A stretch of DNA of 63,652 nt, the filler included, from Octopus bimaculoides (lineage: Eukaryota): the NCBI RefSeq assembly GCF_001194135.2. It is 7 parts of 6 records of this genome, joined end to end, with 100 filler letters (N's around TTAATTAATTAA, not from the genome) between each part and the next. Parts side by side here need not be neighbours in the genome. Positions count along the whole stretch, not along the records: positions 1 to 15,710 come from NC_069009.1; 6 more parts are not named here. One strand, 5' to 3'. The position numbers were made by a program, and so were the translations under genes. How positions within the stretch are numbered: position 1 is the first letter of the stretch; every line of letters starts with the position of its first letter. Below, in pieces: positions 2,046 to 15,237 of the stretch. A model generated the notes under the pieces. It had not been told where the DNA came from. It ran no database searches and saw only the letters and a program-made list of their open reading frames with translations.

Positions 2046-2117
2046 GTATTTGTATCACAATAAAATCACAAAAATTCATCCACGCATCTACGAAAATCTT
2101 CCGAATTTAGAAACACT
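2046..2117 (+). CDS. LRR exon E1: YLYHNKITKIHPRIYENLPNLETL
   Basis: ttttatgttttag acceptor, gtaagt donor at 2118, 72 nt, LRR consensus. Confidence 0.85.
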
Positions 2118-2235
2118 GTAAGTAGAGTCACTTTTCTTCACGTTATTTCATTCTTCATGTATGAGAATGAATCCTCCTCCTTTTCTTTTTCTTCCTCTCG
2201 TTCTTCTTTTTCTTTTTCTTTTTCTCCTTCTCCTT

Positions 2236-2268
<33 letters not shown>

Positions 2269-13076: not shown

Positions 13077-15009
13077 CTTCTTCTTTTTGTTGCCCTTTTT
13101 GTTTTCCTTCTTCCCTTCTTGTTTCTCCATTTTCTTCGTCACTTGCTTCTTCATCTTTTCTTCTTCTTCCTCTTCTTCTTTTCATCTTCTTTAACTTCTT
13201 TTTTCCTGTGCCATTTACTTTCTGTTTTAAAGATTTCTTCAGACATTCTTTCTGCATATTTCACCATTGTCTCTATTCTCCTAATAATTCTAATATTAGA
13301 TTGTCAAGAAAAGTCTTGCGGTCTCTAACCCTTAAATTCAGATACACGTTTCTCGGCTCAAACAAAATGTTATTAATCAACATAAAAACCATCATCAGAA
13401 TCAACATACTTTTTCCAACACAAAACAAGTTTATTTATGCCATTAGCGTACAAATCCTGCGTTCCGGTGGTGATGAAGTCATTGAAGGCGTGTTTGGCAT
13501 CGTCTTGATTTTTGAAGCATTTCTCACGCACGAAGTTGTCGAGATGCTTGAAAAGTGGCAGTCAGTAGGCGAGAGGTCTGGTGAGTATGGCGGATGGGGT
13601 AGGGTTTTGCAGCCTAATTCGTTCAACTTCGACGTGCGGCCGAGTGTTGTCGTGGAGAAGAATTGGTAATTTTCTATTGACTGTTGTTGTTGGAGTTTCT
13701 TATGCATTTGATCCATTTGCTGACAGTACTTCACCATAATAGTTTTGCCTTGATCCAAAAGTGTGATGGATGAGACCAACGCAGACTACTAAACATTCGC
13801 CATGACCTTCTTTTTGTGCAACTTTGGCTTCGAGAAGTGCCGTGGAGCTTCGTCGGCGTCCAACCACTGAGCTGAGTGTCGCCGGTTGTCGTAAAGAATC
13901 CATTTTTCATCGGAAGTGGCTATCCGGTCGAGTAATGGGTCATTCTCGTTGCGTAAAAGAAGAGAAGACGACCCTTTAAAACAGTGTTTTTGTTGTTTGG
14001 TCTTTCAATTCTTGTGGAACCCATTTCTCAAGTATTTTTGTTTTTCCAATTCCTTTCAAGTGGTTGGAAATTGTCGTATACGTTACGTCTAATTCAGAAA
14101 CAAGCCCTCGAACAGTTGTGCGTTGATTGGCTTCGAATAAGGCTCTTAGTTGATCGTTGTCAACATCCGATGGTCGACCACTACGCTTATCGTCTTCAAG
14201 ACTCTCGTCACCGTTACGAAATTTCTTGAACCACCATTGTGCTATACGTTCATTGGTGGTTCCTGGGCCAAATGCATCGTTGATATCGCGAACTGCTTCA
14301 GCAGCTTTTCGGCCTTGTTTAAACTAGAATAAGAAAATTGTGCGTATTTACTTATTGTCCATGTTGTATTCAAAGTTCCGGAAAAAAATGGATTAGTGAT
14401 TCAAATCGAAAAAGTAAAGAGTAACACGAGATTAGATAGAGCGAAAACGGGCTTTAAAATTATATATAAATTCAAAGTAATTTATCGACAATCAATTTGA
14501 AAATACATCATTTCAAGCCAAAATTTAAAATTCCGCAAGAACTTCTCTTGACAACATAATATTTAAAGCACCTCCATTGCCGCCTTCATCATTATTGACG
14601 TCTTCATCCTTGTTATCATCATCGTCATCATTCTCGACTTTACTGTTATCTTCCTCATCAACATCGTGAAATTCCACATCGTTTTCCTCATCATTAACAT
14701 CATTAATTACCATAAAATACCAATGCCAAATTTTCAAAACTATCATCATCATCACCACCATTAACATCCTCACCAACATCATCATAGTCAGTATCATATT
14801 CAGCATCAACATAGACATGCTAATCCCCATCATTAACAAAATAATCAACATTAACCATATCAGCCCCATGATCAGCATCATAATATCTTCATTATCAACA
14901 CTATCAGCATATTATCTTCCCCTCCGCCTCGTCAACATGTTCATCATTACAACCACAATGTCTGCTATCACCATAATCCTCCCCCTCCTCATCATTATTT
15001 ATTATTATT

Positions 15010-15043
<34 letters not shown>

Positions 15044-15237
15044 AGTTCTTCATCGTGATTTATTTTCCATATTTTCCTCCAGCTATTTGTTTAGTCATAA
15101 TATAAAAATCATGTCGCAAATGTATCTTCCATACAATTTCTTCTGCGCAAAATTTTATTTTACAGAGATTTGGATCGAAATGGTATTAAGGAAGTTAAAT
15201 CAGGAACCTTCCAAAATCTTTCTAGCCTAAGAACTCT
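2046..15237 (+). CDS. Partial multi-exon gene for an extracellular typical-class LRR protein (8 x 72-nt exons; LGR/RXFP/GRL101-like exon architecture; N- and C-terminal exons not in this segment)
   Basis: Eight AG..GTAAG-bounded exons, each exactly 72 nt and phase 2-2, splice into an open 8 x 24-aa LRR array (xLxxNxIxxIxxxxFxxLxxLxxL). Seven N-glycosylation sequons (NLS x5, NIT x2). Confidence 0.9.
2190..3300. repeat. Long (CTT/CCT)n polypyrimidine tract (similar tracts at about 4800-5220, 8840-9630 and 12990-13200)
   Basis: Seen directly; it is the source of the poly-S/L/F/E/K pseudo-ORFs. Confidence 0.9.
3649..3720 (+). CDS. LRR exon E2: NLRDNNIVEIKIETFRNLSSLTRL
   Basis: ttttatgtcacag acceptor, gtaagt donor at 3721, 72 nt. 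Confidence 0.92.
4199..4270 (+). CDS. LRR exon E3: YLEYNDINEIEPGAFETLFKLRTL
   Basis: tttttttgttacag acceptor, gtaagc donor at 4271, 72 nt. Confidence 0.92.
6156..6227 (+). CDS. LRR exon E4: NLRDNNITNINVRTFQNLSSLTDL
   Basis: ttctatgttacag acceptor, gtaagt donor at 6228, 72 nt. Confidence 0.92.
6661..6686 (+). pseudogene. Dead LRR exon remnant P1 (about 20 nt of exon 3' end plus donor)
   Basis: ttactagtgtaaacaactct|gtaagatgaatcagtcttc resembles exon ends such as ccagtttaacaacact|gtaagttgaatc and is followed by the homologous post-donor intron. No acceptor or 5' exon sequence upstream. Confidence 0.65.
7783..7854 (+). CDS. LRR exon E5: NLRNNNIKEINEGTFRNLSSLTDL
   Basis: ttctatgttacag acceptor (about 100 nt upstream nearly identical to that of E4), gtaagc donor at 7855, 72 nt. 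Confidence 0.92.
8402..8428 (+). pseudogene. Dead LRR exon remnant P2
   Basis: attagtcgtgtaaacaactca|gtaact followed by the homologous post-donor intron; same left junction as P1. Confidence 0.55.
10198..10587 (-). mobile_element. Full-length tRNA-derived SINE (family A) inserted antisense in LRR intron
   Basis: Minus strand has an A-box-like TGGCTGTGTGG head and a degenerate B-box (GGTTCAGTCCC), an internal (TA/CA) tract, and a 3' body shared with copies at 22.8, 57.9, 60.6 and 62.4 kb. It interrupts sequence that is continuous in the paralogous intron at about 12430. Confidence 0.85.
10703..10774 (+). CDS. LRR exon E6: TLYSNNITEINAGSFQYLYSLTNL
   Basis: ttttacgtttcag acceptor, gtaagt donor at 10775, 72 nt. 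Confidence 0.92.
11372..11397 (+). pseudogene. Dead LRR exon remnant P3 (donor mutated GT>AT)
   Basis: ttaccagtgtgaaccacttt|ataagttgaatcagtcttc followed by the homologous post-donor intron. Confidence 0.6.
12541..12612 (+). CDS. LRR exon E7: ILWGNNIQEIKVGTFQNLSSLTTL
   Basis: ttttaccttacag acceptor, gtaagt donor at 12613, 72 nt. Confidence 0.92.
13296..14559 (-). mobile_element. Full-length mariner transposon (Hsmar1/cecropia-like) with decayed transposase at about 13373-14362
   Basis: Imperfect TIRs ttagattgtcaagaaaagtcttgcgg / ccgcaagaacttctcttgacaacataa, TA on both sides, 1264 bp long. Minus-strand peptides: MDNK*IRTIFLF*FKQGRKAAEAVRDINDAFGPGTTNERIAQWWFKKFRNGDESLEDDKRSGRP, WVPQELKDQ and HPPYSPDLSP. 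Contains stops and frameshifts. Confidence 0.92.
15166..15237 (+). CDS. LRR exon E8: DLDRNGIKEVKSGTFQNLSSLRTL
   Basis: ttttattttacag acceptor, gtaagt donor at 15238, 72 nt. Confidence 0.92.

What the first reader, a model, noticed from the sequence alone, without database searches (positions are those of the whole stretch)
2046..15237. Hidden LRR gene built as a tandem array of 72-nt exon cassettes, expanding by exon+intron duplication
Seen in sequence: eight exactly 72-nt phase 2-2 exons, each one LRR, invisible to the ORF track. The flanking introns are paralogous: post-donor gtaagtTGAATCAGTCTT...ATATTTCTAAATCT, a GT-rich block, a CTT block, a CAT block, and an acceptor block nearly identical before E4 and E5. 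So the LRR count has grown recently by duplication of whole units. Established: one-LRR-per-exon phase-2 architecture with this exact boundary occurs in LGR/RXFP/GRL101-type receptors and other extracellular LRR genes. Inference: this is an actively evolving, variable-length recognition ectodomain, possibly an immune or sensory receptor system in a cephalopod.
Basis: partly seen in the sequence, partly recalled or inferred. Interest (0 to 1): 0.8.

Follow-up and report, generated by a model that had tools for sequence, protein, structure and literature searches.

The report
Unannotated octopus LRR gene, exon-cassette array
The window holds the middle of an unannotated octopus gene whose leucine-rich-repeat domain is built from eight 72-base exons, one repeat each, that multiplied by copying exon and intron together; this is a clean new example of a known gene architecture, and its function is unknown.

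Summary
Eight AG|72 nt|GT exons (2046, 3649, 4199, 6156, 7783, 10703, 12541, 15166) are all phase 2/2. Spliced together they give 191 aa of regular 24-residue LRRs (Pfam LRR_8, E=7e-79), and no simulation produced such an exon by chance. The introns are collinear paralogues (65-94% identity).

New here: three exon-less units (psi, near 6681, 8423, 11392) share one deletion breakpoint. A composite module of live exon plus dead exon was therefore copied three times.

The N gap at 9075-9564 lies inside a (CTT)n microsatellite in an intron. Both flanks map to the same point of one module, so no exon is expected to be missing. A collapsed whole module cannot be excluded.

Paralogues in Octopus sinensis and O. 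bimaculoides have the same exon and intron blocks, plus a first exon with signal peptide and LRRNT. They show independent local expansions, and predicted isoforms skip single cassettes.

The seven scaffold residues are strongly constrained (dN/dS 0.03). The other residues evolve at the intron rate, so positive selection is not shown. "Recent" is only relative: copies differ by 6-35%.

The C-terminal domains, expression and function were not found, so an LGR-type, immune or sensory role is untested. This is a new member of a known kind.

The parts
2046..2117 (+). Exon E1, 72 nt, phase 2/2, LRR YLYHNKITKIHPRIYENLPNLET ('YL.[YH]N' type)
   Evidence: In the tree it clusters with W_E3, Obim_E2 and Osin_E2 (89% support).
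3649..3720 (+). Exon E2, 72 nt, phase 2/2, NLRDNNIVEIKIETFRNLSSLTR
   Evidence: It groups with the first LRR exon of the paralogues (66% support).
4199..4270 (+). Exon E3, 72 nt, phase 2/2, YLEYNDINEIEPGAFETLFKLRT ('YL.[YH]N' type)
6156..6227 (+). Exon E4, 72 nt, phase 2/2; the live exon of module 1
   Evidence: E4+E5 form a clade with 100% support.
6666..6790 (+). psi1: dead unit. Only the last ~15 nt of an exon (agtgtaaacaactct), the donor gtaaga at 6681 and the post-donor block remain. The acceptor and the 5' ~55 nt of the exon are replaced by CAT-rich sequence.
   Evidence: Alignment A1. psi1-3 are monophyletic with 99% support.
7783..7854 (+). Exon E5, 72 nt, phase 2/2; the live exon of module 2
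8408..8530 (+). psi2: dead unit with the same breakpoint as psi1; weakened donor gtaact at 8423
9075..9564 (.). Assembly gap inside the (CTT)n microsatellite of intron E5->E6
10159..10598 (.). Insertion of about 440 nt (SINE-like) that interrupts the CAT/acceptor part of module 2. It is not part of the repeat unit.
   Evidence: homology to the reference module stops at 10158 and resumes at 10599.
10703..10774 (+). Exon E6, 72 nt, phase 2/2; the live exon of module 3
11377..11500 (+). psi3: dead unit with the same breakpoint; the donor has mutated to AT (ataagt) at 11392
12541..12612 (+). Exon E7, 72 nt, phase 2/2. It is followed by a single unit without a psi.
13292..14563 (-). Decayed mariner-like transposon inserted in intron E7->E8. 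It is not part of the gene.
   Evidence: Terminal inverted repeats, frameshifted transposase, Pfam HTH_48 E=7.7e-12.
15166..15237 (+). Exon E8, 72 nt, phase 2/2, DLDRNGIKEVKSGTFQNLSSLRT. A post-donor block follows, so the array probably continues beyond the piece.

Best explanation
The window contains the middle part (at least 8 LRRs) of an unannotated member of an octopus family of extracellular LRR genes. In the paralogues the gene starts with one exon that encodes a signal peptide and an LRRNT cysteine cap. That exon ends in phase 2, in the same split Leu codon (CT|G) as every cassette.

The gene then continues as a string of 72-nt exons, each encoding one 24-residue 'typical' LRR (xLxxNxIxxIxxxxFxxLxxLxx). 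Every cassette is symmetrical (phase 2/2, 72 = 3 x 24). Gain, loss or skipping of any unit therefore keeps the frame and adds or removes exactly one turn of the solenoid.

The array grew by tandem duplication of whole units. A unit is exon, post-donor block, GT-rich block, (CTT)n, CAT-rich block and acceptor block. The most likely mechanism is unequal recombination between the paralogous, microsatellite-rich introns (inferred).

One A-type unit lost its acceptor and the 5' three quarters of its exon. The resulting composite of live exon plus dead unit was then copied, giving E4+psi1, E5+psi2 and E6+psi3. This shows birth and death of cassettes.

Selection has kept the seven hydrophobic/Asn scaffold positions and all splice sites. 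The other positions drift at the neutral rate. The product is most likely a glycosylated, secreted or membrane-anchored LRR solenoid that binds a ligand (inferred). Its ligand, its C-terminal domains and its expression are unknown.
For: Exons, phase and open frame.

LRR identity:
- Pfam LRR_8, E=7e-79.
- PDB relatives IGFALS, LRRC15, TLR3/13, LGR4/5 and LRIG1, E 1e-39 to 1e-51.
- AlphaFold pLDDT 85.6, pTM 0.83, with strands every 24 residues.

Unit duplication:
- Collinear self-alignments, for example 6568-8034 ~ 11285-12792 (1.5 kb, 70%), 5906-6539 ~ 7530-8132 (80%) and 9577-10158 ~ 11827-12401 (81%).
- Window-specific clade E4+E5 100%, +E7 83%, +E6 68%.
- psi1-3 share one breakpoint and are monophyletic at 99%.

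Family context:
- The O. sinensis scaffold VCDQ01005429.1 has 5 such exons.
- O. bimaculoides CM046629.1 has 8.
- Both carry the same acceptor (tttatgttccag), donor (gtaagttg) and intron blocks at 70-80% identity to the window.
- Their exon 1 is SP+LRRNT and ends in phase 2.
- O. sinensis isoforms XP_029657302.2 / P0021 / P0024 differ by exactly one 24-aa cassette.
- A 96.5%-identical unit pair exists in O. sinensis.

Selection:
- dN/dS is 0.03 at scaffold positions and 1.02 elsewhere.
- Under neutrality the probability that all 8 units stay intact is <=1e-6 at the observed divergence.

Other: 7 N-x-S/T sequons and no Cys in the 191 aa.
Against: - No transcript evidence. No protein more than 53% identical to the spliced product exists among 5.8 billion predicted proteins, and no window ORF is on record in the assemblies.
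- The window contains no start, no signal-peptide/LRRNT exon, no LRRCT and no stop. That it belongs to one complete, expressed gene is inferred from the paralogues.
- The paralogous gene models are themselves truncated fragments.
- The local clade could partly reflect gene conversion rather than the order of duplication: identity is 86-90% around E4/E5 but 68-78% in the psi half.
- The N gap could hide a collapsed module.
Confidence: 0.75

Rival explanations
1. The array is the ectodomain of a leucine-rich-repeat GPCR (LGR, RXFP or GRL101 type, or an LRR-bearing adhesion GPCR).
For: - 72-nt phase-2 LRR exons are the rule in gonadotropin-receptor genes (PMC11378527, citing Koo 1991).
- LGR4/5 ectodomains are among the good PDB matches, E about 1e-41.
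- An octopus-specific adhesion-GPCR expansion includes 5 of 22 members with LRRs (PMC6408891).
Against: - No 7TM, hinge, LDLa or GPS sequence is in the window or in the two paralogous loci.
- The paralogues start with SP+LRRNT and no LDLa, which argues against the RXFP/GRL101 type.
- IGFALS, LRRC15 and TLR3/13 match as well or better, so the LRR sequence is not diagnostic.
- Several paralogous loci with independent cassette expansions are not what is known for LGRs (own knowledge).
Confidence: 0.1
2. The array is a dead or dying gene fragment: it is no longer transcribed, and its cassettes are merely not yet decayed.
For: - No annotation and no transcript-derived protein was found.
- Three cassettes are already dead.
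- Transposons and long microsatellites fill the introns.
- Non-scaffold positions evolve neutrally.
Against: - All 8 exons keep AG, GT, an open frame and 7/7 scaffold residues, although neighbouring intron and psi sequence has diverged 20-35%.
- Scaffold dN/dS is 0.03 with pS 0.61.
- Simulated neutral survival of all 8 units is <=1e-6.

Inactivation would therefore have to be very recent.
Confidence: 0.1
3. The similarity between introns comes from independent insertions of a common repeat or transposon next to unrelated LRR exons, not from duplication of exon+intron units.
For: The introns are rich in microsatellites and carry real transposon insertions.
Against: - The blocks occur in the same order and at fixed distance from the splice sites in every unit. 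Homology runs without a break from intron through exon into the next intron.
- The same layout is found around LRR exons of the paralogues.
- The true insertions (mariner, SINE-like) are each present in only one unit.
Confidence: 0.02
4. The cassettes are a germline donor bank for somatic assembly, as with lamprey VLR.
For: There are many similar LRR cassettes in tandem. The same idea has been proposed for brown-alga LRR exon arrays (PMC11378527).
Against: Every cassette has a canonical acceptor, polypyrimidine tract and donor in one common phase, so ordinary splicing is sufficient. Nothing observed here points to somatic rearrangement.
Confidence: 0.01

Closest known systems
Octopus 'leucine-rich repeat-containing protein 4-like' gene models (O. 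sinensis XP_029657302.2, XP_036369515.1; O. bimaculoides XP_014782915.2)
   Same: - 72-nt phase-2 LRR exons with the same acceptor and donor sequences.
- The same post-donor, GT and CAT intron blocks at 70-80% nucleotide identity.
- 47-53% protein identity to the window product.
- Local unit expansions.
   Different: They are different loci: the best identity to the window is 78-81%, with no megablast match. Unit numbers and intron lengths differ, with introns of 170-9000 nt. These models are truncated fragments that end at the TAA inside a donor site. The name 'LRRC4-like' is an automatic label; no Ig or TM part of LRRC4 was seen.
Glycoprotein-hormone receptor / LGR ectodomain genes
   Same: One LRR per exon of about 72 nt, all introns in phase 2, and origin by exon duplication (PMC11378527 citing Koo 1991). 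The repeats are 24-residue 'typical' LRRs.
   Different: No 7TM or hinge was found. The octopus family has several loci with independent expansions and dead cassettes. Whether the intron sits at exactly the same residue of the repeat could not be tested here.
Brown-alga ROCO (LRR-ROC-COR) genes with shuffled LRR exons
   Same: Each LRR is a 72-bp phase-2 exon. There is intense tandem exon duplication, and alternative splicing gives transcripts with different LRR numbers (PMC11378527).
   Different: Those proteins are cytoplasmic LRR-ROC-COR GTPases of a different kingdom, and positive selection is reported for them. Here the family has a signal peptide and LRRNT, and no excess of nonsynonymous change was found. 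The resemblance is convergent.
Lamprey VLR cassettes
   Same: Tandem banks of LRR-coding cassettes next to an LRR gene.
   Different: VLR cassettes lack splice sites and are copied in somatically. Here every cassette is an ordinary exon.
Slit genes (own knowledge, not confirmed in the paper library)
   Same: Individual LRRs are encoded by 72-bp exons in an extracellular LRR protein with LRRNT caps.
   Different: Slit LRR domains are short (about 4-6 repeats) and each is capped by LRRNT and LRRCT. Here at least 8 repeats follow each other without a cap.

Membership tests
Extracellular 'typical' LRR proteins with cysteine caps (LRRNT ... LRRCT) | 24-residue repeats with LxxLxLxxNxLxxLxxxxFxxLxx | tested here: met
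   All 8 repeats score 7/7 on the scaffold positions. Pfam LRR_8 E=7e-79. The AlphaFold model is a regular solenoid.
Extracellular 'typical' LRR proteins with cysteine caps (LRRNT ... LRRCT) | Signal peptide and N-terminal cysteine cap | tested here: inconclusive
   Absent from the window (tblastn). Present in exon 1 of the paralogues in L001 and L002, which joins the array in the same phase.
Extracellular 'typical' LRR proteins with cysteine caps (LRRNT ... LRRCT) | C-terminal cap (LRRCT) and/or membrane anchor | tested here: inconclusive
   Not found in the window or in L001/L002. All three arrays run off the available sequence.
LGR / RXFP / GRL101 receptors | 7TM rhodopsin-type domain downstream of the LRRs | not testable with these tools
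   The 3' part of the gene lies outside the window. No full-length family member was retrieved.
LGR / RXFP / GRL101 receptors | LDLa module(s) at the N-terminus (RXFP/GRL101 type) | tested here: not met
   The paralogues begin with SP+LRRNT directly. There is no Cys-rich exon in the window (0 Cys in the 191 aa).
LGR / RXFP / GRL101 receptors | One LRR per ~72-nt exon, phase 2 | tested here: met
   The feature is shared with other families, so it is not diagnostic.
Tandem exon-duplication arrays (symmetrical cassette exons) | Homology extends from the exon into both flanking introns, collinearly | tested here: met
Tandem exon-duplication arrays (symmetrical cassette exons) | Cassettes are alternatively included in transcripts | not testable with these tools
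   Only indirect evidence: NCBI isoforms of the O. sinensis paralogue skip one cassette each. There are no transcript data for the window.
VLR-type somatic assembly | Cassettes without splice signals, plus an incomplete germline gene | tested here: not met
   All 8 cassettes have AG, a polypyrimidine tract and GTAAG.
Brown-alga ROCO LRR arrays | ROC-COR GTPase domains after the LRRs | tested here: inconclusive
   None is in the window. A signal peptide in the paralogues argues for a secreted protein, not a cytoplasmic one.

The most novel reading that the evidence does not exclude
Octopuses may carry a lineage-specific, almost unannotated family of secreted or surface LRR proteins whose repeat number is diversified in two ways. 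In the germline, cassettes are born and die: there are independent local expansions in each locus, including 96%-identical copies in O. sinensis. In the transcript, symmetrical cassettes are skipped combinatorially. If so, the family would give many solenoid lengths and surfaces from few genes. That would be a Dscam-like or ROCO-like recognition repertoire for immunity or neuronal/chemotactile recognition in a cephalopod.
Probability: 0.15. Interest if true: 0.75.

Novelty: new member of a known kind. Interest (0 to 1): 0.4.

Why it matters
The locus shows step by step how a repeat domain grows. The cassette is symmetrical, the paralogous introns are available for unequal recombination, and the dead cassettes date the order of events.

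It also exposes a gene family that annotation pipelines break into fragments. Models end at the TAA that every phase-2 GTAAGT donor creates, or they read into low-complexity intron sequence. LRR content in cephalopod genomes is therefore probably under-counted.

If the cassettes prove to be alternatively spliced, the family becomes a candidate diversified recognition system in an animal without adaptive immunity. None of that is shown yet.

Tried and rejected
1. E3 as the live counterpart of the psi units (an alternating A/B two-exon module). Rejected: the psi units are monophyletic and A-like, and do not group with E3.

2. Search for a signal-peptide/LRRNT exon or further LRR exons in the window, by tblastn at word size 2, blastn-short and a pattern scan on both strands. 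None was found.

3. Exhaustive HMMER search of 1.84 billion representatives. It gave 126,293 hits led by giant LRR proteins at 27-43% identity, which is uninformative for family assignment.

4. Third homologue search with the O. bimaculoides paralogue, to reach a full-length member or the 181-aa model. Not retrieved, so the family's C-terminus remains unknown.

5. P0007's locus is not on record. Four window ORFs were looked up to locate the source contig and extend the locus; none is on record.

6. Rfam and tRNA scans of the window found nothing.

7. Test for positive selection. Non-scaffold pN (0.18-0.35) is not above intron divergence (0.20-0.42) in any pair. There is no signal, though power is low.

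8. Literature search for Slit 72-bp LRR exons and for a described octopus LRR cassette family. Nothing was found in the library.
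Full report
**1. Observation.** The piece (1-15710) is AT-rich, microsatellite-laden eukaryotic DNA with N runs at 1481-1612 and 9075-9564. Each begins with the third base of a split Leu codon and ends with CT, so every flanking intron is phase 2.

Spliced together, the exons read YLYHNKITKIHPRIYENLPNLETLNLRDNNIVEIKIETFRNLSSLTRL... 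for 191 aa without a stop. The two other frames are full of stops.

A blind scan of both strands found 54 AG-72-GT/GC intervals open in this phase. Exactly these eight match all seven LRR scaffold positions, and every other interval matches five or fewer. In 200 simulations preserving local dinucleotide composition, no interval reached 7/7. None of the exons is visible as an ORF of 70 aa or more. No additional cassette, and no signal-peptide or LRRNT exon, is present in the window.

**2. The assembly gap.** TRF places (TTC)77 at 8845-9074 and (CTT)20 at 9576-9634, the same microsatellite on both edges of the N run. I used the uninterrupted E6->E7 interval as a reference module.
- The left flank (7796-8936) aligns collinearly to reference positions 10716-11891.
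- The right flank (9577-10158) aligns to 11827-12401 at 80.6% identity.
- After a 440-nt insertion, 10599-10702 aligns to 12435-12540.

The gap therefore sits in an intron, at one point of one module. Reading frame is not at stake and no exon is expected to be missing. This test cannot exclude a collapse of one or more whole modules in the gap, because flanks of a tandem repeat would look the same.

**3. What the product is.**
- Pfam gives LRR_8 at E=7e-79.
- The best solved relatives are IGFALS, LRRC15, TLR13/TLR3, LGR4/5 and LRIG1 (E 1e-39 to 1e-51). These are the generic 24-residue 'typical' extracellular LRR class, with no specific family standing out.
- AlphaFold2 on the single sequence gives pLDDT 85.6 and pTM 0.83, with a beta-strand every 24 residues.
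- The product has seven N-x-S/T sequons and no cysteine.

**4. Intron paralogy and the order of events.** Self-comparison shows long collinear matches:
- 5906-6539 ~ 7530-8132 (80%)
- 6568-8034 ~ 11285-12792 (1.5 kb, 70%)
- 7679-8936 ~ 10601-11891 (67%)
- 9577-10158 ~ 11827-12401 (81%)

The 100 nt before E4 and before E5 are 94% identical.

New here are three exon-less units at about 6681, 8423 and 11392. They keep only the last ~15 nt of an exon, the (decaying) donor and the post-donor block. In all three, the same CAT-rich sequence (..catcattcattac) abuts the exon remnant. They form a 99%-supported clade. One deletion therefore killed one cassette, and the composite [live exon + dead unit] was then copied to give E4+psi1, E5+psi2 and E6+psi3. 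E7->E8, E3->E4 and E1->E2 are single units.

The dead copies differ from each other by 18-21%. I take this as the neutral divergence since that triplication.

**5. Family context.** The nearest proteins in 5.8 billion are short Octopus models named 'LRRC4-like' (47-53% identity): XP_029657302.2 and XP_036369515.1 of O. sinensis and XP_014782915.2 of O. bimaculoides.

Their loci have the same anatomy:
- O. sinensis scaffold VCDQ01005429.1 carries 5 cassettes.
- O. bimaculoides CM046629.1:4057340-4079254 carries 8.
- All are 72 nt and phase 2, with tttatgttccag|...|gtaagttg and the same intron blocks, 70-80% identical to the window.
- Neither locus is the window's (no megablast match).

Exon 1 of these genes encodes a signal peptide plus a four-Cys LRRNT. 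It ends ...GAATATCT|GTAAGT, in the same phase and the same split Leu codon.

The NCBI models are fragments. They stop at the TAA that follows the split Leu when a GTAAGT donor is read through, and one gene is split into two models. An older version reads into CAT-rich intron.

Three O. sinensis isoforms differ by exactly one 24-aa cassette. That is what symmetrical cassettes allow.

**6. Trees.** I built trees from exon plus 100 nt upstream and 110 nt downstream for all 21 live units.
- Window clade: E4+E5 100%, +E7 83%, +E6 68%.
- O. sinensis clade: E1/E4/E5 100%.
- A loose O. bimaculoides clade.
- An old 'YL.[YH]N' repeat type shared by all loci (W_E1, W_E3, Obim_E2, Osin_E2; 89%).

Cassette number has therefore grown independently within each locus. 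In O. sinensis two units are 96.5% identical over 500 nt. In the window the youngest pair is 6-18% diverged and the rest 25-35%. 'Recent' thus holds for the family, but only relatively for this locus.

Identity between modules 1 and 2 is 86-90% around the live exon and 68-78% in the dead half. This may reflect gene conversion or constraint.

**7. Selection.** Nei-Gojobori counts over E2 and E4-E8 give a pooled dN/dS of 0.49. The split is 0.03 at the seven scaffold positions (pS 0.61) and 1.02 at the sixteen others.

Non-scaffold pN (0.18-0.35) is never above the divergence of the flanking introns (0.20-0.42). The data therefore show strong maintenance of the fold and splice sites, and no evidence for or against diversifying selection.

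A simulation of neutral decay gives a probability of <=1e-6 that all eight units stay intact at 10% per-lineage divergence. The gene has been functional for most of its history.

**8. Mechanism (inferred).** Unequal recombination or replication slippage between paralogous introns adds or removes units. Every such event is in frame and changes the solenoid by one turn. Partial deletions produce dead units that travel along in later duplications. The protein is most likely a glycosylated extracellular LRR binder.

**9. Comparison with the known.** One LRR per ~72-nt phase-2 exon, and growth by exon duplication, are long known for gonadotropin-receptor/LGR genes. The same is described for brown-alga ROCO genes, where alternative splicing of such cassettes is also reported (PMC11378527).
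- LGR-type membership cannot be tested: the 3' end is missing.
- The LDLa-bearing RXFP/GRL101 type is disfavoured by the paralogues' N-termini.
- An octopus-specific adhesion-GPCR expansion with some LRR-bearing members (PMC6408891) is only a lead.
- I found no paper describing this octopus family.

**10. Verdict.** The functional reading (immune or sensory, actively diversifying) is untested, and one part of it (excess amino-acid change) is not seen. This is a new, unannotated member of a known kind of gene architecture and is of moderate interest. Transcript data and a long-read assembly would settle the open points.

Noticed in passing
window 13292-14563 (minus strand): Decayed mariner-like transposon in intron E7->E8. 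It has 23-nt terminal inverted repeats, TA on both sides, a transposase broken by frameshifts and stops, and a Mos1-type HTH (Pfam HTH_48, E=7.7e-12).
   Followed up: yes
window 10159-10598: Insertion of about 440 nt that is absent from the paralogous modules. By eye it looks like a tRNA-derived SINE on the minus strand, but ARAGORN and Rfam report nothing. One 43-nt match (91%) in the O. bimaculoides locus L002 at 6095-6137.
   Followed up: partly
window 2000-15000, + strand: The sense strand of every intron is strongly pyrimidine-rich (GC skew down to -0.72, AT skew down to -0.77). This comes from long (TTC)n arrays (2183-3293, 8845-9074, 9576-9634, 13031-13191) and CAT-rich blocks. Whether it reflects splicing regulation (polypyrimidine-binding proteins) or mutation bias is unknown.
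   Followed up: no
all eight donors in the window; L001 34971-34974; L002 19862-19865: Every donor reads CT|G TAA GT, so intron retention adds Leu and then a stop. The NCBI models of the paralogues end exactly at this TAA, although a further cassette follows (L001 36018-36089). These annotated 'proteins' are truncated.
   Followed up: yes
L002 10001-19865 (O. bimaculoides CM046629.1): One LRR gene is annotated as two models (86 aa and 181 aa). An older model (XP_014782915.1, 141 aa) reads into His/Gln-rich low-complexity sequence. The family is systematically mis-annotated.
   Followed up: partly
L002 16922-17163 and 17336-17577: A 242-nt stretch is 100% identical on both sides of the N gap 17164-17335. 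This is probably an assembly artefact in the O. bimaculoides assembly.
   Followed up: no
L001 132-4453 (O. sinensis scaffold VCDQ01005429.1): Tandem satellite with a period of about 493 nt and copies about 97% identical, upstream of the LRR gene.
   Followed up: no
window 5906-6300 vs 7530-7930, compared with 6570-7225 vs 8313-8970: Modules 1 and 2 are 86-90% identical around the live exon but only 68-78% identical in the half holding the dead unit. This suggests a later gene-conversion tract or constraint near the live exon.
   Followed up: partly
window 1481-1612: A second N run, flanked by (AT)n-like sequence, upstream of E1. At an estimated 132 nt it could hide a 72-nt exon with its splice sites, and no test was made.
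   Followed up: no
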